In this document: piece by piece, positions 17,487 to 40,093 of the stretch
Layout: the number at the start of each line of letters is the position of its first letter
Position numbering within the stretch: the stretch's first letter is position 1
Virus record (IMG/VR): IMGVR_UViG_3300044797_000098
Span: 186,001-250,000 of that record
DNA: 64,000 nt
Reading direction: 5' to 3' (one strand)
The notes under the pieces: model-generated
What the model saw: the letters and a program-made list of their open reading frames with translations, nothing else
Told to the model about the DNA's origin: nothing
Databases searched by the model: none
Position numbers and translations under genes: made by a program

Positions 17487-17487
17487 A

Positions 17488-20809: not shown

Positions 20810-20861
20810 TTATATCTCCTAGATATAGTTCAAGAATATGTTGTATTATGCGGTGATTGGG

Positions 20862-22736
20862 TTATTTTGGAGGAGCTGTTGGCGTTGGTGTAGGTGCTCC
20901 GCCTCCTGGTGCTCCACCTGGTCCGCCAGCTGGACCGCTTGTTGGTGGCGGTGGTGGTAATCCGAGATCTGCTGGCGGTGCTCCTCCACCACCTCCTGAT
21001 GGAGAACCGAGACCTGGAAGTGGCGGGAGTCCTCCGCCAGCTCCACCAGCGCCGGTTTCTCCGCCTGGTTGTTGTCCTGCTGCGTCAGCATACGGACTCT
21101 GACCAGGTAGCGCGCTTGGAGCAATTTCTGGTATATCACTATCCTCATCCAAGCCTCTTAACTCGTTCAATGCCATTGCTTCCAGTGAGGCCAGCTCTTT
21201 CTTCCTAACCGCTTCCTGAATATCTTCTTTCTTCATCTTTCTACGCTCTTCATCATATTCTAATCCGAGCGAACGATACAATGTTTGTTGAGAAACTCGT
21301 TTTTGATCACCAGTTGATAGTGCAACTAATTGTTGAATGTAGTCCATAGTATCAAAAATACTCATATGACTCCATTCTACTGTTGGAATTATCAATTTTT
21401 TCTCACCATCTTCATATTCATAAAACTCATTTAATTTTGATATGGGTGCGAATATTTTATTCTTTAACCAATTACTCATCATATTACGGAATGCCATATA
21501 TCTTTGACGAAGAACATCTAATGATACGCCTCCATTGGAATAGGTTATATCTCCACCGCCATCCATTAATACTTGCGGAACCATCAATCCCATAAATATC
21601 TCTTTTAATAATTGAGTTATATCTCCTGATATATCTATAATTCCAGAATTATATCCTACACGCTCTACTGTAACTGCCTCATGTGTAAATATTTTAAAAT
21701 CCTGATCATATTGTGCTTCCGCGAATGCATTACGCCAGATATCGAGATCTGCTGGTTGTGGTTTGTAATCAGCAGATCCTATCTTAACAAGAGTTAAAGG
21801 ATTAATCATATTTTGAGCCTGTGCGAACTTTGCTTCCCTTAACTGATCGAAGAGCATTAATTGACGAAAACAACTGACTGGTAATCCTGTTCCCCTAACT
21901 TCATAAGGACTTATTCTTCTCGCTAAGTGAGAAACATAAAAATTATCTAATGGAATATTTTCTCCACGCTTAACGTGCTCTATTATTGTTTCATTAAGCT
22001 GACTTCTTTGCTCAATATCTGATGGCTTATTAGAAAATACAATTCTACGAAGATTATCATCAGGACGCATCATAATTAACGGTTCATTAGCAATAACTGA
22101 TTTTTTTACAACCATATAATCTGGATTCTGAATTACAAGCCTACTCCATACCGCATTATTTTGATCTAACTCTCCATACACGAATGTTTCACCTAAAAGC
22201 CAATATTCCTGTGCTACCTGTATGCATACATTCAATAAATCTATATTTTCAATCATAGTATTGAAAAAGCTTTCAACCTTTCTATTCGAACATCGTATTG
22301 TTAGTTTTGATATCGGATATGTTGAATGAAGGTTTATTGCGTTTTGAATAAACGGTTCGAGAGCATAGAAAGATCTGCACCAACTATTAATTGTTGCTCG
22401 ATCGCGTGGAAGATTTAAATTTGATGAAAGCCATAATGGTGAATAAACGGCTGGCGCTTGTCGTGTCGCTTCACCGCTTCCTCCCCGCCAATTAGCACCT
22501 GATGCTTGACCACTGCTCAATACTTGAGCATTTTTTCTCATATTACCATTTAATGTGCTAACAAACGACGCAGGACTCAATTCACTTTTTGTAAGCCCTG
22601 ACCCATCTCTATATAAACCTCTTTCTACTTCTTTTTCCAATTCTGCTTTTCGCCATTGCGAAACATTTTTGGCCATAGAATTAGATATTATTGGTGGAGG
22701 ACCCTGTTTTTGTAAAAACTTTCCTGAATTAGACAT
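20862..22736 (-). CDS. Portal protein with Pro/Gly-rich C-terminal tail
   Basis: RSFYALEPFIQNAINLH, EYWLLGETF, SPYEVRGTG; directly downstream of the terminase. Confidence 0.82.
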   Translation of the reverse strand: MSNSGKFLQKQGPPPIISNSMAKNVSQWRKAELEKEVERGLYRDGSGLTKSELSPASFVSTLNGNMRKNAQVLSSGQASGANWRGGSGEATRQAPAVYSPLWLSSNLNLPRDRATINSWCRSFYALEPFIQNAINLHSTYPISKLTIRCSNRKVESFFNTMIENIDLLNVCIQVAQEYWLLGETFVYGELDQNNAVWSRLVIQNPDYMVVKKSVIANEPLIMMRPDDNLRRIVFSNKPSDIEQRSQLNETIIEHVKRGENIPLDNFYVSHLARRISPYEVRGTGLPVSCFRQLMLFDQLREAKFAQAQNMINPLTLVKIGSADYKPQPADLDIWRNAFAEAQYDQDFKIFTHEAVTVERVGYNSGIIDISGDITQLLKEIFMGLMVPQVLMDGGGDITYSNGGVSLDVLRQRYMAFRNMMSNWLKNKIFAPISKLNEFYEYEDGEKKLIIPTVEWSHMSIFDTMDYIQQLVALSTGDQKRVSQQTLYRSLGLEYDEERRKMKKEDIQEAVRKKELASLEAMALNELRGLDEDSDIPEIAPSALPGQSPYADAAGQQPGGETGAGGAGGGLPPLPGLGSPSGGGGGAPPADLGLPPPPPTSGPAGGPGGAPGGGAPTPTPTAPPK

Positions 22737-22781
22737 TAAGTTCCTTGATATACTATATCATAATATTAATTATTTACTATA

Positions 22782-24635
22782 TTATCTCATTTTTGGTAAA
22801 TACGCTACTAACACTGGTGGCCTATCTTTTGCAGGATCTCTCATCATTGATTGCATTTTTATTTTAAATCCCTGACTAATATAAAACTTATACGCAATAT
22901 ACGCGTTAAGCATTGCCATAAAAAAATCATTGGGCGAACTACCTTTTACGTAATGTGGAGTTATATCTCCAGCTCTGCTTATACTTGGTTTTATTTCCAT
23001 ACTACATATATGTTGAATCAACATTACTATTTGTTCATAACTTCCCATTGGTATTCTAACATTACCCTTTTTCATTTGTTCATATAAATCTGCTATCCAA
23101 AAATCTCTCTCGAATCTTATTATACGAGGAAAAGTTTCTGAATCATATTTAATATGATCTTTTACTTTATTAGTTGCTTCAGATGAAAGAAACTTTTCGC
23201 CATATTCTGTTTGCAATATTTCATTTAAATCATGAGCATAACCAAAATCGCAAACTGCTAAATTAATCGAATATTTTCTAATTATTTCTTCAATTATTCC
23301 TTTTTTACTTGCTAAATCATTTCTTTTAAATGATGTTGCAAACTCTATTGACATTCTTTGCGGACCAGTCATTGCAATAACAACCGCTGTGCTAAAACTT
23401 TGACCACCTGTTTTAATTTTATTAGAATCAACCAATTGCTCTAAATCATTTTTTCCACCAATATCAATTCCTAAAAATACTGGTAATTCTTCATCTGGTG
23501 ATATACTTGATCTAAACTTTCTGCCAGGGTCTCCACATAATTCTCTAACCTGATCTTGTGTTATTATTGTTGCTTCACCATGGTAAAACTCACCAAGAAC
23601 TTCATTTTGATATCCTTTTTCGGTACTTACCGGATTATTTTCTGGTTTTTCTGATATTATCTTTTCTTTTGTATATGTTGGAACATATAATTGATTAATA
23701 TGAAAACCTATATACTTAGCATCATTTTGATCGTTTAATGCTACCCATTTTCCTCTTTCAACCGCTTCTCTTTTATCTTGCTCAAAACCACAATGAGGAC
23801 AACGAACTATAAATCCATAAATCCATATAGTTTCCCAATCATTAGTTCCAGGCGTATATAATGGAAAATATTCTTTACATTTTTCACATCCTAAATGATA
23901 GTATTGTTGTGATGATGCGTTCCACATATTCCAATATGTGGAACCTCGTTGAAGCGGTGTTCCGAAAAATATCTGAACTCCTTGGCCAGGCTCTCCATAT
24001 TTAGATTGGGTCAATACTTTAAGAGAATTATTTATAGCAGATGCATACATAAGCTGAACTTCATCAAAAAATATAACATCTATGGTTTTACCTCTTAAAC
24101 GATTGCCATCCTCACCACAACTATCTATCCATAAATGATTGCCACCAATAAATTGTTTAAATTGAAGTGAATTATTACTTTCTGATGTAGTATCAATTAA
24201 TGATTGCATATATGATTTTGTTTTACCAACTTTTTTAATTTCACTATTATCAATAATAACCGATGAATTAATCATTGAACTTAATTTTACTTTGGAATAG
24301 TCGTATGCTAATGAGAGCTGCGGGAACGCGTGAATTATACGAATAGGAGGATTTTTGCTATTACCGAATAGACCACTGCCCATAAAATACATTTCAAGAG
24401 CGGACGCCATAGTCGTTTTACCTACTTGTCTCCCCGCAACTATAACAACTGGTTTACTTCCTTTTTCAATGGCTTTTATACCAACATATCTATAAATATC
24501 TGCAAACGGTTTCCAACCACCATCTTGCAACCTGAATCTTTCGCCATCAATTGTCAGATATTTTTGAGCAAAATGAACCGGATCAAAATTTAATAATTTA
24601 TCTTTTATTTTTTCTAATAGTAAATCTTCCGACAT
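22782..24635 (-). CDS. Terminase large subunit
   Basis: Walker A AGRQVGKTT, LRG, Walker B IFFDEVQ, motif C GTP, CEKC/CPHC zinc finger and GFHINQLY (gpA-like), nuclease LGIDIG and NDFFMA. Confidence 0.92.
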   Translation of the reverse strand: MSEDLLLEKIKDKLLNFDPVHFAQKYLTIDGERFRLQDGGWKPFADIYRYVGIKAIEKGSKPVVIVAGRQVGKTTMASALEMYFMGSGLFGNSKNPPIRIIHAFPQLSLAYDYSKVKLSSMINSSVIIDNSEIKKVGKTKSYMQSLIDTTSESNNSLQFKQFIGGNHLWIDSCGEDGNRLRGKTIDVIFFDEVQLMYASAINNSLKVLTQSKYGEPGQGVQIFFGTPLQRGSTYWNMWNASSQQYYHLGCEKCKEYFPLYTPGTNDWETIWIYGFIVRCPHCGFEQDKREAVERGKWVALNDQNDAKYIGFHINQLYVPTYTKEKIISEKPENNPVSTEKGYQNEVLGEFYHGEATIITQDQVRELCGDPGRKFRSSISPDEELPVFLGIDIGGKNDLEQLVDSNKIKTGGQSFSTAVVIAMTGPQRMSIEFATSFKRNDLASKKGIIEEIIRKYSINLAVCDFGYAHDLNEILQTEYGEKFLSSEATNKVKDHIKYDSETFPRIIRFERDFWIADLYEQMKKGNVRIPMGSYEQIVMLIQHICSMEIKPSISRAGDITPHYVKGSSPNDFFMAMLNAYIAYKFYISQGFKIKMQSMMRDPAKDRPPVLVAYLPKMR

Positions 24636-24653
24636 TAATATCTTTCAATATAA

Positions 24654-25259
24654 TTATTTGGCTCCGTTATTCGGCTCACATCCACCCAACGGATCATCCA
24701 CGACTGATGTATCTTCGGATAGGTCTAACTTACCTAATTCAAAATTATCATTATCATTTTTTTGAATAGATTTATTTACTTCCATTATTTTATCATTAAT
24801 ATATTTTTTTACTTCTAACGGCACATCATCTGATTGGGGAAGTTTTTCTTTTATTGTTTTTATTTTTAATAAATCATGTATAACTGCTTCAACCGAGGTG
24901 CCAGGACGATCATCAATATAATTATCTATATAAGTTTTTAATACTGGTATATCTTTAAAGATTTGTATATTGCTATAATGACTGGCGCTTGCTTGTTTTC
25001 TTTGTAAAATATCATATAGACCGGTGCGTTTTTGCATATCTTCTACCGCTTCCGCCACTGTCGAATATTTTGATTTATTACCGAGAATACTATTAATCTG
25101 ATCGAATAATGAATAATCCTGACTTTTTGGTTTAGCTGACTCTTTTTCTAAATTCTTTGCAAAATCATTGAACCAAGACGGAGTTCTATCACCACGATCG
25201 AAAGAGCTTTCATCGCGTGATATTATTGATGAATTACGTGTGAAGTATTTATTTGACAT
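24654..25259 (-). CDS. Hypothetical head-cluster protein
   Basis: 201-aa ORF; KYSTVAEAVEDMQKRTGL; RKQASA. Confidence 0.7.
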   Translation of the reverse strand: MSNKYFTRNSSIISRDESSFDRGDRTPSWFNDFAKNLEKESAKPKSQDYSLFDQINSILGNKSKYSTVAEAVEDMQKRTGLYDILQRKQASASHYSNIQIFKDIPVLKTYIDNYIDDRPGTSVEAVIHDLLKIKTIKEKLPQSDDVPLEVKKYINDKIMEVNKSIQKNDNDNFELGKLDLSEDTSVVDDPLGGCEPNNGAK

Positions 25260-26020
25260 TAGGACCTATACTATTATTGCGTATTATTGCCTTATAGTCT
25301 TCTATACTAACGGTGGCGGTATCATATCCACTTCTTCTAATAATATATTCTTTATATGAATTACAATTATAACACAATACCTGATACCCTGGTGGAAAAT
25401 CATTTTTAATTAAATATCTATAAAACTCTCGACCAAAACCTATATTTTTTCTTTCCACCGATCCATTATTATGGATATGGTCAATAGTCAAAAACTCCAA
25501 TACATTTTCTTTGCATTCGATACATTGCTTGCCATATTGATCAATAACCGTATTTTTTAATTTTAAAACTTGTTTTCTGGAGCCAAGATTAATACATTTT
25601 TTACATATATTTCTACCATCTTTTTTCTTACATGCATACCAATTTTCATTAGTTAATTCAGTACCACATGATCTACATACATCATGTTGTCCTAATTTAT
25701 TAAAAAAATTTCATATTAGTATTTATTATCTGAGTTTGTTTATGAGGGCAATATCCATTATGTCCTAATGAGCAATTGCAATTATAGCATAAAACTCTAA
25801 AACCAGCAGGATAGTTATTATTTATTAGCCATGTATAAAAATTGCCACCGGCGCTTACACCAATATCTTTTCTATGTTTATTTCCATTGCCATTAATATG
25901 ATCTATAGACAAAAGATCAATATCTGATATACCGCAACACTCACACACATTGCCATATGTGCTAATTACTAATTTTTTCTGCTTTGCCCTATATTTTCGT
26001 GCTCTATCTATTTTATCCAT
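25249..26020 (-). pseudogene. Tandem double-HNH endonuclease interrupted by a +1 frameshift at the homopolymer 25702-25708
   Basis: Two modules YG-x2-C-x2-C...L[ST]IDHI.N.G...R...P.G[FY].VLCYNCN; removing one base of the T7 run joins both ORFs into one ~256-aa frame. Confidence 0.8.
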
Positions 26021-26033
26021 CTTTACTGTTTTA

Positions 26034-26915
26034 TTATGACGGAAAATTAGCTCCGAAGTCGAAGTTATCCGAAGTTTTGTATTCCATATGATGGTTTGCC
26101 GGATATCCACGATCTCTACGTACTTGAGCGTACCCCATGTTATCTAATAATTCCATTAATTCAGCCTGTTCTCGTTTGTCAAGGCTCCATTCATTAACTT
26201 GTGCCTCGAACATTAATTCGATGTCATGCCCACCTGATACCATTCCATTTATTAATGTTTTTGCAATTCTTGATATCAAAATTGGAACGGTAATAATGAT
26301 TCCACCAATACGATCTTGTTTAGCTTCTTTTACTAACCCGTCCTCATCAAGATCTGCTTTCTTATTTTTATATCCACCATCAATTTTTTTGATGGCTTGT
26401 TCAAGACGACTAATACCATCCAAGATTTCTCTACGGGCTTGTTCGAGTTTCCCGATATCAACTTTACCATCATAGTCATCAACTATTGCTTTTGATATTG
26501 CAGAATTAATTCGTTTAAGAGCAGATATGGTTCGTTCCATACCGGTAGTTTCTGTGCCGGTGTGTTTTGGTAGATTTTGTAGGCGATCATGAACCCATTG
26601 TAAGATGCCAGCAGGAGGAGGTGGTTTCCAAGGATCTTGAACTTCTAATTCCTCAACTTTGTTATCATCCTTATCTTTTTTGCCATCACTCTCAACTTCG
26701 ACTGGGTCTTCGGTAGACACTTCTAATGGCATATCTGCATCTGACCCTGGAAGAGGAGGGAGTTTGAACGTGATTTCCATGGCATCATTTGGCTGATGGA
26801 GTTCGACAACGTCTTCCATTGAAGGCTTTTCTTCGTATAAAACGACCTCATCTTCGTCTCCGAAGTTCTCAAAATCGTTTGCATCTAGGAACTGGGCTTG
26901 TTTATACAATGACAT
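26034..26915 (-). CDS. Putative internal head protein (acidic N-terminus)
   Basis: 293 aa; YKQAQ, NKKAD, VKEAK motifs. Confidence 0.7.
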   Translation of the reverse strand: MSLYKQAQFLDANDFENFGDEDEVVLYEEKPSMEDVVELHQPNDAMEITFKLPPLPGSDADMPLEVSTEDPVEVESDGKKDKDDNKVEELEVQDPWKPPPPAGILQWVHDRLQNLPKHTGTETTGMERTISALKRINSAISKAIVDDYDGKVDIGKLEQARREILDGISRLEQAIKKIDGGYKNKKADLDEDGLVKEAKQDRIGGIIITVPILISRIAKTLINGMVSGGHDIELMFEAQVNEWSLDKREQAELMELLDNMGYAQVRRDRGYPANHHMEYKTSDNFDFGANFPS

Positions 26916-26922
26916 TTTTACC

Positions 26923-28484
26923 TCAAAATAGGGATATATCGTATGCTAAATTATGTATAGATTTAGGAGTATTAGGATTAATTGCTACATACTCACGCAA
27001 TTTCGGATCACTATCTTTTGCCATTTCAGCTAACGTATCTGGCGGGGTATTATAGTTTGTTGCTACACTATAACGAACACTGTTATCTTTATCTTTTGCT
27101 AACTCAATTAATGTTGATTGAGGTGTATTACGATTTCTTGCAACATTAAAGCGCACACCATTGTAATGATCTTTTGCTAATTCAACTAATACACTTTGTG
27201 GTGTCTTAGAATTATCCGCAATACTACATCGTATGTGATTAGTTTTATTATCTGTATTGTTTTTATTTGCCTTATAATACTGTAAAATCTCTTCCGAAGT
27301 CGCTTTATTGTATTTTATTTTCAATAAAATTGTCATTGGTCTATTTTCTGCATCCTTAGTAATTTTATTTTTAATCGAATTATCAATATCTAATTCTGTT
27401 TCATCTATTTGATTATCTAATGAATCAAAACATTCTACTTTAATAATTTGATTATATTCATTTCTATGAACTGCCAATGCAACTTTACTGAATAAATCAT
27501 CTGGATCTTTATTTTTTGATATTATAAAATAAAATATAACATTTTCATCAGTATATTGTTCATAATAACTGGTATTTTCCATTGTAATACACCATTTTGT
27601 TCCGGCGCCATATGCCATACAAGCCTGTTTATTTTTTATAAATAAAACTACATAGTTATTATCTTCATATATTTTTTCCGCACCTTCTGTTTTTATTTGT
27701 TTTTTTCTTGCGTTTTTGATTGTTGTTTTGGTAGATTTTTAATTGCCTCTTCTAATGATATTCCGTCATACCTATTGATATCTTTTTCCTTGAATTTATG
27801 AATATTATTGTGAAAATATTCTATACTGGGGTATAAATTATTAGGATTGATACCAAGATCTAATTGTTTTACCATCCATCTTAAATATTTATTCGTATGC
27901 GAAGGATCTCGTTGAGAGATCTCTTTTATATTTAATTTTGGATATTTTGCTTGTAAATCTTCTATTACGCCAGCGGTTTTTACAAAATTATTGAAAAACA
28001 ATGAACGGAGTTTTACCCGTTCTTGTATTGTATTTGATGCTGATTGGTAAATATTATTCCAAGGATTTAATACTGCATCAGGATTATCTGCAATATATGC
28101 AGAATAATATGCAGTTGGATAGGCATTAAGTCCTTCAACTCCCGTTAAACTACCATATTCTGATGCATAGTATGGTGCTGGATCAAGGACGGTATTTTTC
28201 TTTTCTTGCATTAATTTTCGTAATAATTTCAATCGTTTTAGTCTTTTATTTTTTCGTTTTCTAAATTCAGAAAACTCAGGAAACTCTTCTCCGTCTTTAC
28301 CGATATTTTCCATTCTATCTAAATCTCGTGGTCTTTCCATCATTTCTTGACCAAACGGCATATATTGATTATATGGATATTGCTCATCGCCAATATGAAA
28401 ATATGGAGATCCCTCGAACCCGAACTGACTTTCGTATGGTTCGTTGTAGCAATACTTTTGAAGGAGTTGATCGAGTTTGGTCAT
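26923..28484 (-). CDS. Single ~520-aa gene split by a -1 frameshift at 27699-27707; C-terminal leucine-rich-variant (LRV/HEAT-like) repeats
   Basis: ORF 27693..28484 ends ...QEKNK*; the -1 frame continues QIKTEGAEKIYEDNNYVVLFIKNKQAC into MAYGAGTKWCIT of ORF 26923..27618. Confidence 0.75.
26958..27240 (-). repeat. Four 72-bp (24-aa) LRV-type repeats
   Basis: IRCSIADNSKTPQSVLVELAKD / VRFNVARNRNTPQSTLIELAKD / VRYSVATNYNTPPDTLAEMAKD / LREYVAINPNTP. Confidence 0.9.
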
Positions 28485-28485
28485 T

Positions 28486-29403
28486 TTATTTAAGTTTCAT
28501 ATCCTTTAATTTTTGCAATATCTTCTTACGCTTGTTTCTGCGTTTCTTGCGAAAATCAGCAACGCTATCGTATTTATCAAGATTCATATATAAACCTTCA
28601 CCATAATCGTAATTGCGTTTTAACTGTGAAGATTTCACTACCGAAGTTCTCTTTGCATAATATGGCTGTAATTCCTCCGTTATTGGAATAGCATCCCATA
28701 AATTAGTTTTATTTATTATTGCTACGGCTCGTTCAGGATTTTTCTTCATTGCCTTATCAAGATTCTTTTTTAGATATCCATCTGGTGATAGTCTAACCAT
28801 ATCTTTATTCTGTGATATCCATTTGATTATATCTGGATCGACATCGAAGTCAAGTTTTGCTGATAGATATACTACACGAATAATACGATTAGTATTATAC
28901 CTAAATGTTGTATCTGGATCAAGACAAGTTCGTATTATTTTATTTTTTATATCTTTTATGCCTTGGTGAGTGGGGTCTTTGATTTTTTTAAGATCTAATG
29001 TCATTAGTAATGTATTACAATAAAAATCACGAGAAAACATCTCACGATCTAAATCTGTTGGGTTTTTTATACCAAGTTGATGGAGATGAAGATTAATTTT
29101 TGGTATAATGAAGTTTGATGAAAAATCAAGTTTAAATTGATTTCCCGGAAAAATTATACTACGGTGCCCATCATCACCCTGTGATGTTTTAATATTGTAA
29201 TGTTTTTTAAGTTCTATACCTAATTCTTCTGCAAGATTATGGACGAGTTTATTACCGGTGGTTAAATCAAGATCATTCAATTCATTTGGTTTAATAATAC
29301 CAAGCATTTTGTCGCGTGGAGTTCCGCCAACAATCCAACAATTTGGAATGTTGTTTTCATCACCGACTTTCTTGATTAAACTTAAAAGGTCGCGAAGTTT
29401 CAT
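28486..29403 (-). CDS. Class II tRNA nucleotidyltransferase / poly(A) polymerase family protein with non-canonical motif D
   Basis: WIVGGTPRDKMLG, NDLDLTT (DxD), SRDFYCN, DPTHQGIKDIKNKIIR; EDxxR position reads YNTNR. Confidence 0.88.
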   Translation of the reverse strand: MKLRDLLSLIKKVGDENNIPNCWIVGGTPRDKMLGIIKPNELNDLDLTTGNKLVHNLAEELGIELKKHYNIKTSQGDDGHRSIIFPGNQFKLDFSSNFIIPKINLHLHQLGIKNPTDLDREMFSRDFYCNTLLMTLDLKKIKDPTHQGIKDIKNKIIRTCLDPDTTFRYNTNRIIRVVYLSAKLDFDVDPDIIKWISQNKDMVRLSPDGYLKKNLDKAMKKNPERAVAIINKTNLWDAIPITEELQPYYAKRTSVVKSSQLKRNYDYGEGLYMNLDKYDSVADFRKKRRNKRKKILQKLKDMKLK

Positions 29404-29412
29404 TCACTTCCT

Positions 29413-31059
29413 TTATACCGCTGGTGCCGGGGCTGGTTTTGGTGCCGGTGAAACCGGTGCTGGATTTTCTACTTCTATTGGCTGAGCAGCAAGTTCACCT
29501 TGTGGATTTTCAACGGTTCCTTCTGGTTTCGTTGCTTTTTCCATATCTGTTTGATCTTGAAGTTGTTTTTTAACTTCTTTTCGTTGCTTCTCTTTTTGAT
29601 CCATTTGTTCTAAATTTGATTTAATGGCTTGTGCTCCCGGTGGAGTTTTTTGATTGTCTCCTTCGAGATCGATATTTTTTGATTTAACCGAGCCTCTTAA
29701 TTTAGATAGTATCTCATCTATACGCACGAGAGCATATTGGCCAGAATCGAGACTCTTATTGATACTTTCACCGAGTTGTGGAAAGAATTGTGCCAATCCA
29801 AGTCTTGACAACATTAAATCACATACCGCTAATTGGCGCGCAATTTCTCTCGTTCGAAAAATATTATTGACCTGTTCTAATTTATTAATAACATCTTGAA
29901 CCGTTAAATTAGCAAAAGCACTATCTAATATAGTATCAATATCAGTTTTAGGCGCTTCAACGCTTGGTGGTTTATCTACATTTTCTGGTGTTATGCCAGG
30001 CGCTTCCGGTTTAGGTTGATCAGTTTTTAAATCAGGTTTAGGATCAGGAGCATCAGGAGGTATTGCTTGTGCCTCAACAACTAAATCATTTTTACCTTCT
30101 GGAATAATTTCTTGATCCATCAGCACATCATTATCAATTTCGACTTCATTAATATCGTCAACCTGTGCTTGATCAGTTTTTTCTTCATCAGGTGTTTCAG
30201 TAATACCGGCATCCTCTAAATTATCTATGAACTTACCTACTGCACTATCCTCTGTTATGCCCTTATCTTTTACTGTTCCAGGTGGAGGAGCTTGTAAAAT
30301 ATCAGGAGTATTATTTGGTATACTACCACCGCCTTGTGGCTGACTACCACCAGCAGGAATATCTCCAAGATTTATACTCATATCACCAGGAGTTTGTTGA
30401 GCGAGTTTTACCATAAAACTACTTGCATCAGTGAATCCTTCTTTTTGTAAAATATTAGCTTGGCGAATAATTAAATCTACAACTGTTTGTAATGAAGCAG
30501 TTGATATTTTATTTACTATCTGTATTTGTTTCTTTAATTCAAAAATTGCCGAAAGCAATCTTTCAAAATCACCACCGGCGAACATATGTCCTTGCTGCGA
30601 ACTTAAAAGTTTTTCGGCTGAATTAAGTCTTCCAAGTATTTTTCTACGAAGATCTTCTATCGTTTGTCTTTTTTCTTCTTCACTTTTTTGTTTTGCAGCA
30701 GCATTGGCTGCTTCTTGTGGTGCATTTGATATTTGATCACTTACCGTGCGGAGAGGATTTGGTATATTTTGTTTTGGATTTGGGAGAAAGTAATTAGTAT
30801 CCTCATTTATATAGTATGAGGCATTCTGAGCCTTTTTATATTTTTTAAAATCTCCGGATTCATAATACTTCATCCAGTTAATAAAATCTAATTTTTCTAT
30901 TGGATTCCAGTCAGCAGTAATAGAATCTATTGCGCTATTTTTATTTATACCAAAATGCATTTTTATATATACATTTTTCATAGATTCCATCCATCTACTT
31001 AAATTATAGATAGGTTTGGTCGACATGGAATCAGACAACATAGGAAAAGCTTGCTTCAT
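29413..31059 (-). CDS. Putative internal head protein
   Basis: 548 aa; QANILQKEGFTDA motif; K-x-A-Q sites preceding Pro-rich acidic linkers. Confidence 0.65.
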   Translation of the reverse strand: MKQAFPMLSDSMSTKPIYNLSRWMESMKNVYIKMHFGINKNSAIDSITADWNPIEKLDFINWMKYYESGDFKKYKKAQNASYYINEDTNYFLPNPKQNIPNPLRTVSDQISNAPQEAANAAAKQKSEEEKRQTIEDLRRKILGRLNSAEKLLSSQQGHMFAGGDFERLLSAIFELKKQIQIVNKISTASLQTVVDLIIRQANILQKEGFTDASSFMVKLAQQTPGDMSINLGDIPAGGSQPQGGGSIPNNTPDILQAPPPGTVKDKGITEDSAVGKFIDNLEDAGITETPDEEKTDQAQVDDINEVEIDNDVLMDQEIIPEGKNDLVVEAQAIPPDAPDPKPDLKTDQPKPEAPGITPENVDKPPSVEAPKTDIDTILDSAFANLTVQDVINKLEQVNNIFRTREIARQLAVCDLMLSRLGLAQFFPQLGESINKSLDSGQYALVRIDEILSKLRGSVKSKNIDLEGDNQKTPPGAQAIKSNLEQMDQKEKQRKEVKKQLQDQTDMEKATKPEGTVENPQGELAAQPIEVENPAPVSPAPKPAPAPAV

Positions 31060-31082
31060 AGTGATATGCTGAATAATGGCTA

Positions 31083-31832
31083 TTAATCTAATTTTTGGCT
31101 AATAGTTTCACTCAATAATGTCGCTTCTTTCAATCTTGTTTCAACTGGGAGAGGAGTTATATCTTTTGGTTTTAATTTTTTCATTTCATCATTAAACATT
31201 TCAATAAATAACAAAGAGGTATCATAATCTAATTTTGTTAGTATTTCTTTTATTATATTAAATACAACATTTATATGATCATCAACTACCTGAATATTAA
31301 TATTATTTTGTATATTTATTTGATCTGATGGACCATTGAGGATGGTATCATATTTCTCAGTAATAGCCAATAATGTATTAAACCATTCAATAAGAGCTCT
31401 ATCTGGACGAAAGTTGGCTGGATCTTCTTGCATAATATCGAACATCTGAGAAAGACGAAGTTCAGCATTTACAACTAATTTTTTTATTATTGATTTTATA
31501 TCGACTTCTTTATCTGCATATTTTTCTAATGCCGTGTGATATGCTGATGTTCCCTGTATTTCAGTCTGTAATTGTTGTGAAGCAGTTATATTTGATTTAG
31601 TTTTTTCTAAATCTTCTCTCATTATTGTATAAAAATCGAGATATTCATCTTTAAATGATGTGATATATCTTTCTGAAAAAATAAACGCTTTTTCAGTATC
31701 AGGATTATATTTTGCTTTAAGCCATTCAGCTATATCAGCGCTCGATATACCAGCTAAAAGTTTGCTAACTATTTCATCTTTATCAGGATGTTTTAAAAAC
31801 CTTTTAGCTATATTTTCTTTATTTTTTGCCAT
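31083..31832 (-). CDS. Possible terminase small subunit
   Basis: N-terminal HTH (HPDKDEIVSKLLAGISSADIAEWL), central helices, beta-prone INIQNNINIQV; in the packaging cluster. Confidence 0.45.
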   Translation of the reverse strand: MAKNKENIAKRFLKHPDKDEIVSKLLAGISSADIAEWLKAKYNPDTEKAFIFSERYITSFKDEYLDFYTIMREDLEKTKSNITASQQLQTEIQGTSAYHTALEKYADKEVDIKSIIKKLVVNAELRLSQMFDIMQEDPANFRPDRALIEWFNTLLAITEKYDTILNGPSDQINIQNNINIQVVDDHINVVFNIIKEILTKLDYDTSLLFIEMFNDEMKKLKPKDITPLPVETRLKEATLLSETISQKLD

Positions 31833-31855
31833 CTTTACTGTTTATTATGTAGTAA

Positions 31856-32566
31856 TTATTCTTGACCCAATCTTTGGCTTCTTGTATCAAACACTGTATG
31901 CGCATTTTCGTGTTGCATTATTTTTGTTTGCTCACTGACATCACCACCGGGAACTTTATTCCCATCTAATGTTGAAAAACCCGTTTCAAAATCATATACT
32001 TTATGATCCATGCAACATTGCCATCTGTGTTCACCTACACGAGCTAATTGTGCTCCAGCATGATCTGGACATGTTCTGGCACTTAATGGTGCCTCTAATA
32101 TACGATATTTTTTATAATTAGGACTTTTTTCGATATCTTTTATCGAGTCACTAACTTTATTCATTTCGTCTTGTTTTACTTTTGGATCCTTATACTTTTT
32201 TTTTAATTGCTCAATTCTATCATCTTCCATTTGTTTAGCAGCTGCAACTGCATTTTTTGGTGCAGCGAATGTCAATAAGATTTCATCAAGCACGCTTGCT
32301 TGTTTCATTAGTAATTCATCACCGCTTTCATCAAAAGCAGCAGCAACGGCAGCTAATTCATCAAGTTTTTCTGATGTTATTACCGGTTCTTCTGGTTCAA
32401 TTTTACTAACTTCTTCTGCACCTTCTCGTATCATCTCTGATGCTTTTACCAATGAACTTGCAACGATATTTAGACAATCTTCGTCGCCTTCGGCATTAAC
32501 CAAAAGATCATTTTCTGAACTTTCGAGCCAACTTGCAACTAGTAATAGTTTCTCTGATAGTTTCAT
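31856..32566 (-). CDS. Putative internal head protein with C-terminal zinc ribbon
   Basis: AAAFDESGDELLMKQA motif; CPDH...CCMDH. Confidence 0.65.
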   Translation of the reverse strand: MKLSEKLLLVASWLESSENDLLVNAEGDEDCLNIVASSLVKASEMIREGAEEVSKIEPEEPVITSEKLDELAAVAAAFDESGDELLMKQASVLDEILLTFAAPKNAVAAAKQMEDDRIEQLKKKYKDPKVKQDEMNKVSDSIKDIEKSPNYKKYRILEAPLSARTCPDHAGAQLARVGEHRWQCCMDHKVYDFETGFSTLDGNKVPGGDVSEQTKIMQHENAHTVFDTRSQRLGQE

Positions 32567-32575
32567 TTGTTTCCT

Positions 32576-34198
32576 CTAAAAAAATATCTTCGAGTTTTGT
32601 AAATATGCACCTTCATATGTGTCATCCATTCCGCGACGATAGTTAGGATGGCAATCTCCGTTCTTATCCTGATACACTTTATGTAACGGAAGCCCGGTAT
32701 GACCACATAATTCGTGTTTGCTGGAAGCGTTTTTCACTACCATCTTACAAGTGGTTGGTGTTGCAATTTTATTTGCACCGAGCCCGTTAGTATATTCTGC
32801 GAAAGCTGTTTGATATGCTTTATCATCACCTGATTCAGACAAAACATTTAGCGCATCTTCTGCTTTATCGAGATTTTCCTCTGCTACTGCTTGGCGAACA
32901 AGCTGAACAAGCTCACTTGCTTTCAAACCATATAATGGTGAAGCGACTGCTGCTGTCCTATAATCCTTGGCTTCTTTATTATTTAAAGAATTAATTCCAT
33001 CTTTGGAAAAAGACTCAATCATTCCTGATGCAATCATAATATCTGGATCAATAATTTTACCATTTTCAACACTAACTGGAACACGGAAAGCTAATCTGCC
33101 ATTATTTATTGATACCGCATATGTTATTGACTTATTATCACTATTAAATACTGATACTTGATGATTTTTTAACCCAAAACTATTTAATTTATTAATAATA
33201 GCATTTCTACCAGCATTTACTTTATCTTTACCAATTGAAAAGTTCGCAACACCAACCGCTGAATCGAAAGATTTAGCGAATGATTCCATTTCTTTATCTT
33301 GATATTTTGGAGTATTTACAACTAAGTTCTTATCTTCTGCTTCAACATTTTGGAAAAATACGCCACCAGCAAAATAATCTGATTTTGTATCTTTTTCTGA
33401 ATTTAATTTTATTAGTGCCATATCGACATTACTAATTTTTTCGATACCATTTTCCTTAATATTTTTCATCGCTTGAAGCACTAATTTATCTGAAACTGTT
33501 AATTTTTTGCCAGCATTGACTGTTATATATGATTCTAAATTAGATTTGGAAAAATCTTCTGGCCCAGCATTTCCTACGAAAACTGACGGTAATAATGCTT
33601 TTCCTGCGACTATTTCTATTGGAATAAATACCGATGTCATTCCTTTTGGAGTTTCAAAAGATGCTTGACAAGTTATGAAACTATTATCACCATTAACAAC
33701 ACTAATATTTGATGCTAATTTTATATTCGCACACGCGCGCGCGCATGCATTTTGAGCAATTTTTGCCGAGGATTCCGTATTACCACGCACTGGATTACCA
33801 AAAATACTATCTAATGCATTGGCTAATGTTGGATCAACAACTTTCTCAAAAGCTTCTTTGACTAATGAAAGATTTTCTATATTATCTCTATTATATGTTT
33901 TTGGTGCAGCAAGTTTTTCTATTTGGCCCAATTCTTGGGAAAATATTTCTGCGAACTTTGTATTTCTTGAATATAATCTTTTATATAAATCTTTTATTTC
34001 CGCTCTTGTTATGAATAATTTATTACTACCAGTCATTCTTGATACTACGTTGGCCATCACTCCAATTGTCTGATCTTCTGGATATGCTTCGGAAGCTTGC
34101 GAAAGTTTTTCTGCAAAAGATGATATAAGCACTTTTTCATTATCATCTATTGATTTTGATAGCGAGGAAGCAATATTTTTAATTTGATTAAAATCCAT
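32576..34198 (-). CDS. Hypothetical structural protein with two repeated alpha/beta domains
   Basis: VFIPIEIVAGKALLPSVFV....EDFSKSNL versus FRVPVSVENGKIIDPDIMI....ESFSKDGI. Confidence 0.7.
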   Translation of the reverse strand: MDFNQIKNIASSLSKSIDDNEKVLISSFAEKLSQASEAYPEDQTIGVMANVVSRMTGSNKLFITRAEIKDLYKRLYSRNTKFAEIFSQELGQIEKLAAPKTYNRDNIENLSLVKEAFEKVVDPTLANALDSIFGNPVRGNTESSAKIAQNACARACANIKLASNISVVNGDNSFITCQASFETPKGMTSVFIPIEIVAGKALLPSVFVGNAGPEDFSKSNLESYITVNAGKKLTVSDKLVLQAMKNIKENGIEKISNVDMALIKLNSEKDTKSDYFAGGVFFQNVEAEDKNLVVNTPKYQDKEMESFAKSFDSAVGVANFSIGKDKVNAGRNAIINKLNSFGLKNHQVSVFNSDNKSITYAVSINNGRLAFRVPVSVENGKIIDPDIMIASGMIESFSKDGINSLNNKEAKDYRTAAVASPLYGLKASELVQLVRQAVAEENLDKAEDALNVLSESGDDKAYQTAFAEYTNGLGANKIATPTTCKMVVKNASSKHELCGHTGLPLHKVYQDKNGDCHPNYRRGMDDTYEGAYLQNSKIFF

Positions 34199-34209
34199 TT
34201 GTTTGCCTG

Positions 34210-34683
34210 TTATTGAAGTATCTCTGGGTGTGTTGCAAGAATGTTTTGTTCTTCGCTTTTATTCAATGTCGACAAAAGAGCTTTTATAAAAGTTTTATCC
34301 GTTGCTAATTTTTGTGGAAGAAAACGCTTGACTGTTGAAAGATCTTCTAATGATAGCCCAAGATCTGATGCTGCAAACTTGGCAAAAGGAGTGCCACAAT
34401 AATAGATATTTACATATCCTGATTGTGATATCAATACATCCCAAGTTTTGTCGTCTGATGCTTTTTTTGTATCGATAGACGGTTCCTCGTTATATTTTGC
34501 AACTATATAAGATCCATCATCTGCGCTTTGTATTTGCCACAACTCATCGATATCATTACTATCTTTAAATCTAACTATATCGAATGCAACTTTTTCTAAC
34601 CTGTGCTTTACCTCATCTAAACGGTAAGTTTTAGTGCTAACGGTTTTATGAAGACTATTATAATCAATAGAAAAATTAGCCAT
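34210..34683 (-). CDS. Hypothetical protein, first gene of the head cluster
   Basis: 157-aa ORF; EKVAFD, KKASD. Confidence 0.7.
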   Translation of the reverse strand: MANFSIDYNSLHKTVSTKTYRLDEVKHRLEKVAFDIVRFKDSNDIDELWQIQSADDGSYIVAKYNEEPSIDTKKASDDKTWDVLISQSGYVNIYYCGTPFAKFAASDLGLSLEDLSTVKRFLPQKLATDKTFIKALLSTLNKSEEQNILATHPEILQ

Positions 34684-34751
34684 TTTTGCGGTTCCTTAAA
34701 AGGTATACTAAAATAATAGTGGATTATTAGTGGGTTATCTTATAAATGATA

Positions 34752-35225
34752 TTATTTGGTCCACGTTTCTTCACGAAGATCAGCTATCTGTTTCAATATT
34801 TCTATGATTTTTTCATCTTCTTGGCATAATTTACGTAAACGCCTTAAGCTCCCGCCATATACTATTTTAGTTTTTTTATTATTTTCATCCTTCTTTGAGT
34901 AATCTACGTTGCCATTTAATGATTTAGTTATACTACTTTGATTAACTCCAAGTATTTTGGCTGCTTCTTGTTGGGTCATTTTTTTTATTGATATTAGTTC
35001 AATAACCTGTTTTTGTCTTTTTGTTAGATTATCATCTACCAATCGCCAAAACTCGATTTTTAATCGTTCTTCAAGCTCTGCCACCGCTTCATTGTATTCG
35101 TGTGGATTGAGACGCTTATATATTGATGCATCTTCATTAAAAGATTCTAACATCTCTGTTGCTACTGATATCTCTCCAAAAAGAAACTGATACTTATTAC
35201 TTCTGTTCGTTCGTTTCTCGCTCAT
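34752..35225 (-). CDS. Sigma-70 region-4-like HTH transcription regulator
   Basis: LTKRQKQVIEL...MTQQEAAKILGVNQSSITKSL; no recognisable region 2. Confidence 0.75.
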   Translation of the reverse strand: MSEKRTNRSNKYQFLFGEISVATEMLESFNEDASIYKRLNPHEYNEAVAELEERLKIEFWRLVDDNLTKRQKQVIELISIKKMTQQEAAKILGVNQSSITKSLNGNVDYSKKDENNKKTKIVYGGSLRRLRKLCQEDEKIIEILKQIADLREETWTK

Positions 35226-35329
35226 GCTTTACTCCAAAATGAAAAAAGATGATTAATCAATTTGACTAACCATCTAATATATATCACTAATTATGTATAT
35301 CAGTTTTATTTTTCTACTAAAAATATCCC

Positions 35330-36073
35330 CTAAATCACCAAACTAAAATCTTCAAGCTTGTTCTCACTGAAAAATTGATCTAGATCTTTAAACCCATCAG
35401 GTAAATAAGCCTTTTTTATATTAGCATATTTTGAATAATTTTTTATTATTTTTTGCTCACCATCTTTTCCAGCATCATCACTATCGAGTATCAAAAATAT
35501 ATTATTCGTGTATCTTGTAAGTAATGCTATTTGCTCAAAAGACATATTAGATGATCCGAGCGCGACAACATTTTGTAAGCCTTTGCTATGTGCCTGTATA
35601 ACATCTAACTGGCCTTCCACTAAAATTACTAAATTATTTTTAATAATAGATTTTTTTGCCTTGTCTAATCCGAATAGATTAGATTTTTTTGAAAAGTGAG
35701 TATTTTTGTATTTTGATATATCTCTTAGATTTCTCTGATCATCTGAAAGAATACTCCTACCAACAATCCCAATAATTTCGCCATATACATTTTTATATGG
35801 TAAAACTAAATTATAATCCGACATAGTGCTGCATCTATGTTTTTGTCCATTGTAAATCTTATCATAAATCAGATCACAAGACTTTAATGTATCATTGCCA
35901 ACCATTGATGCCAATACTTCAAGATTTTGATTATTTGGAAAATATCCAAACTGCCATTCTTTTATTGCATCCCGTGAGAGACGATCACTTATGTATGTAT
36001 AAGTATCTTTGGCGGGAGCAAAATTATATAATAAGTCCGTACAACAATTTATTATTGTATCGAATATTGTCAT
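35330..36073 (-). CDS. dnaG: DNA primase catalytic core (Toprim) lacking the zinc-binding domain
   Basis: IIGIVGR, KYKNT..SKKSNLFG, ILVEGQLDVI, VALGS, LILDSDDAG, KDLDQ. Confidence 0.9.
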   Translation of the reverse strand: MTIFDTIINCCTDLLYNFAPAKDTYTYISDRLSRDAIKEWQFGYFPNNQNLEVLASMVGNDTLKSCDLIYDKIYNGQKHRCSTMSDYNLVLPYKNVYGEIIGIVGRSILSDDQRNLRDISKYKNTHFSKKSNLFGLDKAKKSIIKNNLVILVEGQLDVIQAHSKGLQNVVALGSSNMSFEQIALLTRYTNNIFLILDSDDAGKDGEQKIIKNYSKYANIKKAYLPDGFKDLDQFFSENKLEDFSLVI

Positions 36074-36297
36074 TTTAGTAAAGCCTTGGCATTTTTTATA
36101 CTAATAAAAATATTATGATACTGTGGATATTTATATAAAATAATATACTCTAATATATTCTGTGATTTATCGTCATATTGTTTCATAAAATATTTAATAA
36201 TTTCTCGCGCATCATTCTTATTAAGGGAATCTAATTTTGATAGATCCCAGTTTTTTACTATATTTTCAACTATATCATCAATAATTTTATTATTCAT
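36070..36297 (-). CDS. Small hypothetical protein
   Basis: ATGA overlaps on both sides; ILYKYPQYHN resembles IEELYPHYLE in the adjacent gene. Confidence 0.65.
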   Translation of the reverse strand: MNNKIIDDIVENIVKNWDLSKLDSLNKNDAREIIKYFMKQYDDKSQNILEYIILYKYPQYHNIFISIKNAKALLK

Positions 36298-36590
36298 TTT
36301 AATAATAATAACTTATTTATCAGCTCTAAATAGTGGGGATATAACTCTTCAATAATAAGCCTCATTGCTTCACATGATTTAATATTATGATTTACAACAA
36401 AATCTGACAATAACTGTTTAGCTTCAATTTCTGAAACCTCACTAATGTTTGACATACCATATCCTTTTAGGATACCCATGGATAGCTGTTTAATAACATT
36501 CTTTTTATGCTCACCTTTTAAAATAGCACTAGTGCCCTTTTGATTTTTCAACCACTCAATAGTATCTGAAAAATCCTGTGCTTTACTCAT
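36294..36590 (-). CDS. Small hypothetical protein
   Basis: ATGA overlaps; ends EELYPHYLELINKLLLLK. Confidence 0.65.
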   Translation of the reverse strand: MSKAQDFSDTIEWLKNQKGTSAILKGEHKKNVIKQLSMGILKGYGMSNISEVSEIEAKQLLSDFVVNHNIKSCEAMRLIIEELYPHYLELINKLLLLK

Positions 36591-36925: not shown

Positions 36926-36926
36926 A

Positions 36927-38442: not shown

Positions 38443-38471
38443 AGCACTGACTATATCGTTATATTACATAA

Positions 38472-38512: not shown

Positions 38513-38546
38513 AAATATATCAATTTATGCGTGTTTTTACGCTAAA

Positions 38547-40092: not shown

Positions 40093-40093
40093 A

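What the first reader, a model, noticed from the sequence alone, without database searches (positions are those of the whole stretch)
28486..29403. CCA/poly(A)-type nucleotidyltransferase with rewritten base-selection motif, embedded among head genes
Seen: catalytic DxD (DLD) and RD-F motifs are intact, but the motif D position reads YNTNR (~28885-28899) instead of EDxxR. The protein is short (305 aa), with no HD domain and a basic C-terminal extension. Established: in class II enzymes the Asp and Arg of EDxxR hydrogen-bond to CTP/ATP, and substitutions there change nucleotide specificity. Inference: it may add non-CCA tails (e.g. U/G-containing) or modify a non-tRNA substrate. Its location among putative internal head proteins suggests it may be packaged and injected, for tRNA repair against anticodon/3'-end nucleases or for host RNA tagging.
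Basis: partly seen in the sequence, partly recalled or inferred. Interest (0 to 1): 0.75.

Follow-up and report, generated by a model that had tools for sequence, protein, structure and literature searches.

The report
Minimal phage RNA-tailing enzyme, altered pocket
A 406-kb peat phage carries a cut-down CCA/poly(A)-type RNA 3'-end nucleotidyltransferase in which one nucleotide-selecting residue is changed; the gene sits at the same place beside the DNA-packaging genes in every relative examined, but what it adds, and to which RNA, is untested.

Summary
ORF 28486..29403 (-), 305 aa, is a class II nucleotidyltransferase: PF01743 and structural Z 19 to CCA-, A- and CC-adding enzymes. Motifs A and B are intact. 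YNTNR (28885..28899) aligns column for column with EDxxR.

The change is a lineage trait, not decay. Among 120 homologues (40-100% identity) the Asp position is N in 113 and S in 7, never D, and the Arg is invariant. More distant orthologues at the same locus keep DDP[KR]R.

The whole family is minimal (~250-aa head plus neck). It lacks the canonical flexible loop, the body/tail tRNA-binding domains, an HD domain and the PAP I signature.

The gene is a fixed member of an array: primase, sigma-like, five unknown genes, NTase, variable partner, 293 aa, 201 aa, TerL, portal. TerL lies downstream in 57 of 57 loci.

Orthologues are fused to a PNK-like HAD phosphatase, to muralytic domains, or to a partner carrying a motif otherwise found only in the prohead protease/scaffold protein.

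"Among head genes" is only partly right, because the neighbours are uncharacterised. "Non-CCA tails" and "injected" remain untested. Published mutagenesis makes the Arg, not the Asp, the main specificity determinant in poly(A) polymerase.

Best reading: an RNA 3'-end repair or tailing enzyme, a new variant of a known kind.

The parts
28486..29403 (-). Minimal class II (CCA/poly(A)-type) RNA nucleotidyltransferase, 305 aa
   Evidence: ORF; PF01743 E 3.4e-10; PHROG tRNA nucleotidyltransferase; model pLDDT 90.4; Z 19.5 to class II tRNA NTases
29266..29328 (-). Motif A: G26-G27-T-P-R30-D31 and the catalytic D44-L-D46
   Evidence: Read from the sequence; G26, G27, R30, D44 and D46 are invariant in 51 family members
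29014..29034 (-). Motif B variant S-R-D-F-Y-C-N (canonical RRDFTINA; ribose recognition)
   Evidence: S124, R125, D126 and N130 invariant; aligned to RRDFT(I/V)N of solved enzymes
28876..28899 (-). Motif D variant Y169-N170-T-N172-R173-I-I-R176 in place of E-D-x-x-R-x-L-R
   Evidence: Alignments; family counts (N170 113/120, D 0/120, R173 120/120)
29059..29133 (-). Family-specific ordered segment (aa 91-115, 'DFSSNF..P.I..L...GI..PT') in place of the canonical flexible loop
   Evidence: helix 103-109 with pLDDT 93-96; canonical loop 'R.E.Y...R.P' seen in Lak and 735-kb phage enzymes
28489..28614 (-). C-terminal tail (aa 264-305): the 'NYDYGEGLYMNLDKYDSVADF' module plus a basic helix. Short (~250 aa) family members lack it
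   Evidence: model helices 271-277 and 281-301 with lower pLDDT
27693..28484 (-). Partner gene (263 aa), start codon 1 nt after the NTase stop. Homologues are fused to the NTase core in several relatives. It shares the basic motif EFRKRKNKRLKR
24654..35225 (-). Conserved gene array holding the NTase: sigma-like (34752..35225), 157, 540, 236, 249 and 548 aa, NTase, partner, LRV-repeat protein, 293 aa, two HNH inserts, 201 aa (position of a small terminase)
   Evidence: Synteny and in 80 loci
20862..24635 (-). Large terminase (22782..24635) and portal (20862..22736), directly downstream of the array
   Evidence: phrog_675 E 5e-57; phrog_16240 E 1.7e-52
13983..14330 (-). Two copies of the motif 'AY[FW][QN]G.GGVNEPTPG..KY' (aa 398-424 and 490-513) in the 1237-aa prohead protease plus scaffold-like protein (11808..15521). 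In relatives the same motif follows the NTase core

Best explanation
The gene encodes a catalytically competent, template-independent RNA 3'-end nucleotidyltransferase of the class II (CCA-adding/poly(A) polymerase) superfamily. It is reduced to the head and neck domains plus a short basic tail.

It is a core gene of a clade of 190-480 kb phages from peat and other metagenomes, not a movable accessory gene.

Proposed mechanism. The two-metal centre (D44, D46) and motif B bind a ribonucleoside triphosphate. R173 reads the Watson-Crick edge of the base. N170 replaces the canonical Asp as the partner of the exocyclic amino group. One or a few nucleotides, most plausibly A and/or C, are added to a free RNA 3'-OH.

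The enzyme lacks three things that let canonical enzymes measure a tRNA and switch from C to A: the Glu of EDxxR, the flexible loop and the body/tail domains. It therefore probably has a single or relaxed specificity. It probably holds its RNA through the basic tail and/or the variable partner protein encoded next to it.

The most likely biological role is healing or tailing of RNA (tRNA) 3' ends during infection.

Shown: fold, motifs, conservation, synteny and fusions. Inferred: substrate, nucleotide and role.
For: Fold and motifs.

Selection on the variant motif: D 0/120 although Asp is one transition away from Asn; R173 and R176 invariant. On the tree, D-type orthologues are basal and the window's protein sits in a 57-row clade (SH-aLRT 97) with N in 54 and S in 3.

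Core-gene status: TerL, the 293-aa and the 201-aa genes lie downstream in 57/57 loci; the 548- and 249-aa genes lie upstream in 55/55. The same position is kept even by orthologues whose profile scores are far lower.

RNA-end repair context: orthologue P0277/P0209, at the same locus, is fused to a HAD domain of the Swiss-army-knife RNA-repair / polynucleotide-kinase phosphatase type (PF10307 E 3e-7; phrog_415 E 1.8e-9). The genome also has two RNA-ligase family genes. Both of its tRNA genes lack an encoded CCA.

Arg as main determinant: PAP R215A loses specificity while D212A does not (PMC2532741).

The only PF01743 gene in the genome.
Against: No biochemical or expression data; no RNA run was listed.

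D165 replacements did not survive A- or CCA-repair selection in the human enzyme (PMC11784652), so Asn may impair or change the canonical reaction.

No tRNA-binding body or tail is present. The genome has only two tRNAs, so a tRNA-maturation role is not compelling.

A strictly conserved position next to the packaging genes is unusual for RNA-repair genes, which are usually accessory.
Confidence: 0.5

Rival explanations
1. It is a virion-packaged enzyme. The NTase is built into the prohead through its C-terminal extension or partner, possibly released by the prohead protease, and ejected with the DNA to act on host or phage RNA at the very start of infection. This concerns where and when it acts, so it is compatible with the best explanation.
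For: The gene has a fixed place 3-6 kb upstream of TerL and portal.

Orthologue P0276, at the same locus, is fused to Peptidase_M15_3 plus phage tail lysozyme; P0224 is fused to Peptidase_M15_3. Such domains are typical of virion-associated proteins.

In relatives the protein fused to, or following, the NTase core starts with a ~25-aa motif that is 65-85% identical to a repeat in the prohead protease/scaffold protein. That motif occurs in no other protein of those genomes.
Against: The window's own NTase and its partner lack that motif. No virion proteome exists. The neighbours are of unknown fold. The complex prediction of NTase, partner and scaffold segment gave no answer. M15 and lysozyme domains also occur in endolysins.
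Confidence: 0.25
2. It is a poly(A)-polymerase-like enzyme that adds untemplated tails to non-tRNA RNAs (host or phage transcripts) to mark them for decay or to stabilise them. The basic tail would serve as an unspecific RNA clamp.
For: No tRNA-measuring body or tail domains. No canonical flexible loop, which is dispensable in PAP but essential in CCA enzymes (PMC2532741). A strongly basic C-terminus. Templating Arg retained. The C-terminal part of class II enzymes decides between CCA and poly(A) behaviour (chimera result cited in PMC2532741).
Against: The PAP I signature is absent from all 266 family members examined (signature as given in PMC13514080). Many orthologues (~250 aa) lack the basic tail altogether. 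No PF12626 or PF12627 match.
Confidence: 0.2
3. One reading: the rewritten pocket (N-x-N-R, no acidic residues) changes base choice to U and/or G, or makes it promiscuous, giving non-CCA tails.
For: Both acidic residues of EDxxR are gone and the replacement is conserved. It coincides with K/R to N at position 172 (D with K/R 52/57; N with N 73/85) and with I to C in motif B. Engineered polarity reversal of this motif is reported to give U/G addition (Cho et al. 2007, as cited). D165 variants are not tolerated for A/CCA repair in the human enzyme.
Against: The Arg, a hydrogen-bond donor suited to N1 of A and N3 of C, is invariant. Asn can still accept the amino-group hydrogen bond. PAP D212A keeps A specificity. 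The 170/172 association rests on about four independent transitions and is not shown to be co-evolution.
Confidence: 0.12
4. The head-neck module has been recruited to nucleotidylate something other than RNA: a protein, a DNA end or a small molecule.
For: The RNA-binding domains are lost. The genomic context is unusual and conserved. Partners are variable. Pol-beta-fold relatives include aminoglycoside and protein nucleotidyltransferases (weak structural matches at Z ~7).
Against: All strong sequence and structure matches are RNA 3'-end enzymes. Motif B and the helix after motif D, which contact NTP and primer in those enzymes, are conserved. The HAD-phosphatase fusion points to nucleic-acid ends.
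Confidence: 0.08

Closest known systems
Class II CCA-adding enzymes (e.g. Geobacillus stearothermophilus 1MIV, Planococcus halocryophilus 6QY6, Thermotoga maritima 3H39)
   Same: Pol-beta head and neck fold (Z 18.9-19.4). Motif A GGxxRD...DxD. Motif B RDFxxN. The Arg and the following helix of motif D.
   Different: E and D of EDxxR are replaced by Y and N. The flexible loop is replaced by an ordered family-specific segment. About 120-170 C-terminal residues (body and tail, the tRNA elbow binding part) are missing. A short basic tail and a separate or fused partner take their place.
A-adding and CC-adding enzymes of Aquifex aeolicus (1VFG/4WBY; 3WFO-3WFS) and S. pombe cca1/cca2 (9NS2-9NS4)
   Same: Best structural hit (4WBY, Z 19.5) and best profile hits (cca2 E 5.9e-21, cca1 E 2.9e-19). 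They are precedents for class II enzymes with a single specificity and, in CC-adding enzymes, without the flexible loop.
   Different: Those enzymes keep the (E/D)DxxR motif and full-length tRNA-binding domains.
Bacterial poly(A) polymerase I (E. coli PcnB, 3AQK-3AQN)
   Same: Same superfamily (Z ~15). The flexible loop is functionally dispensable. Basic C-terminus.
   Different: The PAP I signature [LIV][LIV]G[RK][RK]Fx[LIV]h[HLQ][LIV] is absent. PAP I keeps EDxxR and has body/leg domains.
CCA-adding enzymes of other huge phages (Lak megaphages; the 735-kb phage LR756501)
   Same: Phage-encoded class II enzymes, 25-28% identical to the query.
   Different: Those have canonical DDPLR, the canonical loop 'R.E.Y...RKP' and RRDF(S/T)(V/I)N, and extend well beyond 280 aa. 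They are ordinary CCA-type enzymes; the present family is not.
D-type orthologues of the same syntenic gene (e.g. P0200, P0195, P0277, P0276)
   Same: Same minimal architecture, same family-specific loop replacement, same genomic position.
   Different: They keep Asp at the templating position, as DDP[KR]R or, in P0276/P0197, ADPRR. Some carry HAD-phosphatase or muralytic fusions.

Membership tests
Class II nucleotidyltransferase superfamily (PF01743, CCA/PAP type) | Pol-beta-like head domain with GGxxRD and DxD catalytic carboxylates | tested here: met
   PF01743 E 3.4e-10, above the cut-off. G26, G27, R30, D44 and D46 invariant. Z 19.5 to solved members.
Class II nucleotidyltransferase superfamily (PF01743, CCA/PAP type) | Motif B (RRDFTINA-like) for ribose recognition | tested here: met
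   S124-R-D-F-Y-C-N130 aligned to RRDFT(I/V)N. The first Arg is Ser.
Class II nucleotidyltransferase superfamily (PF01743, CCA/PAP type) | Motif D amino-acid template E-D-x-x-R | tested here: not met
   Y-N-T-N-R occupies the columns. Only the Arg is kept. Family-wide there is N or S at the Asp column and never D.
Bona fide CCA-adding enzyme | Flexible loop between motifs A and B, needed for the C-to-A switch | tested here: not met
   The canonical 'R.E.Y...R.P' seen in Lak and LR756501 enzymes is replaced by 'DFSSNF..P.I..L...GI..PT', modelled as an ordered helix. The alignment in this region is less certain than for the motifs.
Bona fide CCA-adding enzyme | Body and tail domains that bind the tRNA elbow | tested here: not met
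   Structural alignments end at model residue ~250-264, against chains of 340-460 residues. No PF12627 or PF13735 hit.
Bona fide CCA-adding enzyme | Ordered addition of C, C, A to tRNA | not testable with these tools
   Needs an enzyme assay.
Bacterial poly(A) polymerase I | PAP I signature [LIV][LIV]G[RK][RK]Fx[LIV]h[HLQ][LIV] (PMC13514080) | tested here: not met
   Regex finds 0 of 266 family proteins.
HD-domain CCA enzymes (E. coli type) | C-terminal HD phosphohydrolase domain | tested here: not met
   No PF01966 in the protein or in the whole 406-kb genome.
Virion (head-internal or ejected) proteins | Presence in particles, or a capsid-targeting or protease-processing signal | tested here: inconclusive
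   A scaffold-type motif is present in the partners of relatives but not in the window's NTase or partner. There is no proteome.

The most novel reading that the evidence does not exclude
A clade of huge phages packages a minimal RNA nucleotidyltransferase with a re-templated pocket (x-N-x-N-R) into the capsid. It would enter through a scaffold-like C-terminal module that the prohead protease removes, and would be ejected with the DNA to tail or repair RNA 3' ends before any phage gene is expressed. That would be a bacterial-virus counterpart of the virion-borne RNA-modifying enzymes of large eukaryotic viruses.
Probability: 0.15. Interest if true: 0.85.

Novelty: new variant of a known kind. 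Interest (0 to 1): 0.55.

Why it matters
Class II nucleotidyltransferases are the textbook case of a protein side-chain template that selects nucleotides. A natural lineage has fixed Asn for the templating Asp, and the wider family of orthologues also shows Ser, Gln, Lys, Met or His at that position. This gives a ready-made series for testing how much the Asp, the Glu and the flexible loop really contribute.

For phage biology, this is a nucleotidyltransferase that never moves from its place beside the packaging genes across the 80 IMG/VR loci examined. In relatives it is fused either to an RNA-end phosphatase or to cell-wall-degrading domains. That suggests an RNA 3'-end activity is part of the core infection programme of this uncultivated clade, possibly delivered by the particle.

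Tried and rejected
(1) Complex prediction of NTase, 263-aa partner and scaffold segment 380-560 returned 'no answer' (score 0.00, partner pLDDT 37-38). It is no evidence either way.

(2) Neighbour identification failed. Pfam and PHROG found nothing significant for the 540-, 236-, 249-, 548-, 263- and 293-aa proteins. Atlas feature searches for the 263- and 540-aa proteins scored at most 0.63 and 0.47. The AlphaFold model of the 540-aa protein reached only pLDDT 65 and had no PDB match at E <= 0.001; the top hit, the RnlA N-terminal repeats, had TM 0.10.

(3) Co-evolution of positions 170 and 172. The association is strong in raw counts, but only about four independent transitions exist on supported branches, so the sign test has no power.

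(4) Expression. Only peat metagenome DNA runs hold the region, and no RNA run was listed.

(5) Promoter and terminator scan of 20-37 kb. Promoter-like sites were fewer than in shuffles, and the terminator-like sites did not delimit the gene.

(6) The idea that the unknown upstream genes are a phage multisubunit RNA polymerase. No Rpb1/Rpb2-type domains were found in the genome and no PHROG RNA polymerase hits. It is not supported, though divergent subunits could escape detection.

(7) A homology search for the 263-aa partner found only 7 proteins. It looks mosaic: the N-terminal ~170 aa are shared with ~170-aa proteins, and the C-terminal part is fused to an LRV-repeat protein elsewhere.

(8) The literature searches found no study of this minimal phage family.

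Full report
WHAT IS THERE

The window is bases 186001-250000 of a 406,470-bp IMG/VR virus record estimated 95% complete. The DNA runs that hold it are peat metagenomes. All long ORFs in the window lie on the minus strand.

The ORF 28486..29403 (-) encodes 305 aa. Pfam places a PolyA_pol head domain (PF01743) at aa 22-158 (E 3.4e-10, above the curated cut-off). PHROGs calls it tRNA nucleotidyltransferase. It is the only PF01743 gene in the genome.

An AlphaFold model built on 51 homologues is confident (mean pLDDT 90.4). It matches only class II tRNA nucleotidyltransferases and poly(A) polymerase I at high significance:
- Foldseek E down to 9e-12.
- VIA-align Z 19.5 to the Aquifex A-adding enzyme, 19.4 to the Thermotoga CCA enzyme, 18.9 to the Geobacillus enzyme and about 15 to E. 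coli PAP I.

The alignments cover model residues 1 to ~250-264 and stop there, while the solved chains run to 340-460 residues. The protein is therefore head plus neck plus the start of the body. The tRNA-elbow-binding body and tail are absent.

THE MOTIF

Motif A (G26 G27 x x R30 D31 ... D44 L D46) and motif B (S124 R D F Y C N130) are present, and their key residues are invariant in the family.

Two independent HMMER alignments put Y169-N170-T-N172-R173 exactly on E-D-x-x-R: the single sequence against PDB and the family profile against PDB. The following I-I-R176 falls on the canonical (M/I)-L-R.

No alternative EDxxR exists in the protein.

IS IT DECAY OR DESIGN?

A word-indexed search of 5.8 billion proteins found 386 relatives. 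The best 120 (40-100% identical) were aligned. At the Asp column they show N in 113 and S in 7, never D, although Asp is a single transition away from Asn. At the Glu column they show Y 48, S 41 and other residues, never E. N172 is present in 117/120. R173 and R176 are present in 120/120.

A profile search of 1.84 billion cluster representatives gave 138 representatives at E <= 1e-30. Most are ~240-260 aa.

In that wider family many members, including the basal clade, carry D-D-P-[KR]-R, a canonical-type template. Other members show Q, S, K, M or H at the Asp column.

On a maximum-likelihood tree of 173 non-redundant cores, with the motif columns left out:
- The D-type sequences form the basal 32-row clade (SH-aLRT 99).
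- A derived 90-row group has no D at all.
- The window's protein lies in a 57-row clade (support 97) with N in 54 and S in 3.

The switch D to N coincides with K/R to N two residues later (D with K/R 52/57; N with N 73/85). It also coincides with I to C in motif B. Only about four independent transitions are available, however, so co-evolution is not demonstrated.

A FAMILY-WIDE DIFFERENCE FROM CCA ENZYMES

The CCA enzymes of Lak megaphages and of the 735-kb phage LR756501 were the only hits in the phage collection (25-28% identity). They have DDPLR, RRDF(S/T)(V/I)N and the canonical loop 'R.E.Y...RKP'.

In the present family, D-type and N-type alike, that loop is replaced by 'DFSSNF..P.I..L...GI..PT'. 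This segment is conserved and is modelled as an ordered helix with pLDDT 93-96.

The PAP I signature is absent from all 266 family proteins examined (signature from PMC13514080). There is no HD domain in the protein or the genome.

GENOMIC CONTEXT

Read in the direction of transcription, the window has:
- DNA polymerase, UvsX-like recombinase, SSB, RuvC, a DnaJ-like protein, primase and a sigma-like protein.
- Then proteins of 157, 540, 236, 249 and 548 aa of unknown family.
- Then the NTase and the 263-aa partner. The partner's start codon is one base after the NTase stop.
- Then an LRV-repeat protein, a 293-aa protein, two HNH endonuclease genes and a 201-aa protein.
- Then TerL and portal.
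- Then a 402-aa protein, an SLT/lysozyme protein, 133- and 232-aa proteins and a PTP-like phosphatase.
- Then a 206-aa protein and a 1237-aa protein with a prohead-protease-like region (phrog_18299, aa 103-213).

This order is strikingly fixed. Among 80 IMG/VR loci with NTase relatives (40-92% identity):
- TerL, the 293-aa gene and the 201-aa gene lie downstream on the same strand in 57 of 57 loci long enough to tell.
- The 548- and 249-aa genes lie upstream in 55 of 55.
- The 236-aa, 540-aa and sigma-like genes lie upstream in 54 of 55.

Much more distant D-type orthologues occupy the same slot. Only the stretch between the NTase and the 293-aa gene varies.

The gene is thus a core gene of a clade of phages with contigs up to 481 kb. 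It borders the packaging module, but 'among head genes' cannot be affirmed, because its neighbours gave no family or fold.

FUSIONS AND THE PARTNER

The family comes in three lengths: ~250 aa (core only), ~300 aa (core plus a ~50-aa tail, as here) and 410-1100 aa.

- Several long forms are fusions of the core with a homologue of the window's 263-aa partner (P0028, P0047, P0048 and others).
- The window's NTase tail and its partner share a basic motif ((D/E)FRK..NKR.K) found in no other ORF of the genome.
- In other relatives the core is followed by a low-complexity protein, either fused (P0083, P0085, P0095, P0103, P0107, P0113, P0116) or as the next gene (L027, overlapping the NTase stop).
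- That protein opens with 'AYFQGGGGVNEPTPG..KY'. The motif is 65-85% identical to a twice-repeated segment of the prohead protease/scaffold-like protein of this and related genomes.
- In whole-record searches the motif occurs only in those two proteins.
- In the window's genome and in one complete relative, it occurs only in the scaffold-like protein.

More distant orthologues at the same locus carry other fusions:
- A HAD domain of the polynucleotide-kinase-phosphatase / 'Swiss army knife' RNA repair type (P0209/P0277).
- Peptidase_M15_3 plus phage tail lysozyme (P0197/P0276).
- Peptidase_M15_3 alone (P0224).
- A PcfJ-like domain (P0131).

INTERPRETATION

The conserved catalytic residues, motif B and the templating Arg argue for an active ribonucleotidyl transferase acting on a 3'-OH.

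The phosphatase fusion is the classic logic of end healing followed by extension. The genome also has two RNA-ligase-family genes and two tRNA genes without encoded CCA. I therefore favour RNA (tRNA) 3'-end repair or tailing.

Two published data sets bear on the meaning of D to N, and they pull in opposite directions:
- In E. coli PAP I, E211A and D212A keep >90% AMP incorporation, whereas R215A becomes promiscuous (PMC2532741). The Arg retained here may therefore be enough for A (and C) selection.
- In the human CCA enzyme, a library containing Asn at the E, D and R positions yielded no D165 or R168 replacements after selection for A or CCA repair, while the Glu could be D, G or Q (PMC11784652).

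Add the loss of the flexible loop and of the tRNA-measuring domains. A full, ordered C-C-A cycle by the canonical mechanism then looks unlikely, and a single or relaxed specificity looks more likely. Which nucleotide is added cannot be computed.

The packaging idea gains indirect support from the muralytic fusions and the scaffold-type motif in relatives. It has none from the window's own proteins, and the complex prediction was uninformative.

VERDICT

- The object is a new variant of a known enzyme kind: a minimal, re-templated class II nucleotidyltransferase that is a core, syntenic gene of a huge-phage clade.
- The searches of the held paper library found no study of this family.

Noticed in passing
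window 11808..15521 (-): A 1237-aa protein with a prohead-protease-like region (aa 103-213, phrog_18299). It is followed by coiled-coil, acidic and Ala/Pro-rich scaffold-like sequence and a ~90-aa tandem repeat (aa ~395-470 and ~487-565). Each repeat opens with AY[FW][QN]G.GGVNEPTPG. Orthologues of 1120-1283 aa occur in about 20 IMG/VR contigs.
   Followed up: partly
window 16722..17486 (-): A Cys-phosphatase-like protein (Y_phosphatase2 E 1.7e-5, just under the Pfam cut-off) inside the head/ejection module. The syntenic gene in relatives also hits PTP-SAK, the RNA-repair 'Swiss army knife' phosphatase family. It could be an RNA-end healing partner of the NTase.
   Followed up: partly
window 25249..25500 and 25700..26110 (-): Two HNH endonuclease-like ORFs lie between the 293-aa gene and the putative small terminase. 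Relatives have GIY-YIG or DUF723 homing endonucleases and LAGLIDADG inteins in or near TerL at the same place. The packaging region is a hot spot for selfish elements.
   Followed up: no
window 26923..27618 (-): A 231-aa protein with C-terminal leucine-rich-repeat-variant (LRV/HEAT-like) repeats (PF01816 E 5.7e-11). In another contig the C-terminal third of the 263-aa partner is fused to such an LRV protein (P0269).
   Followed up: no
G000 1488..1562 and 372830..372903 (outside the window): The 406-kb genome has only two tRNA genes, Lys(UUU) and Ile(UAU). Neither encodes the 3' CCA.
   Followed up: yes
G000 282888..283349 and 292758..293285 (outside the window): Two RNA_ligase (PF09414) family genes (E 1.8e-29 and 2e-23). 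No RtcB.
   Followed up: no
window 32576..34198 (-): The conserved 540-aa protein is modelled as two similar alpha/beta modules (aa ~140-230 and ~320-410, pLDDT ~80-90) plus a Cys/His-rich C-terminus. No significant structural match.
   Followed up: partly
window 1..64000: Every ORF of 120 aa or more that looks like a gene is on the minus strand. Cumulative GC skew falls steadily across the whole 64 kb, so this is one long co-directional block.
   Followed up: no
window 18587..19600 (-): An SLT / phage-tail-lysozyme-like protein two genes downstream of portal, with PHROG hits to baseplate hub and internal virion protein with endolysin domain. It is probably a virion-associated muralytic protein. 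It is not homologous to the muralytic part of the NTase fusion P0276.
   Followed up: partly
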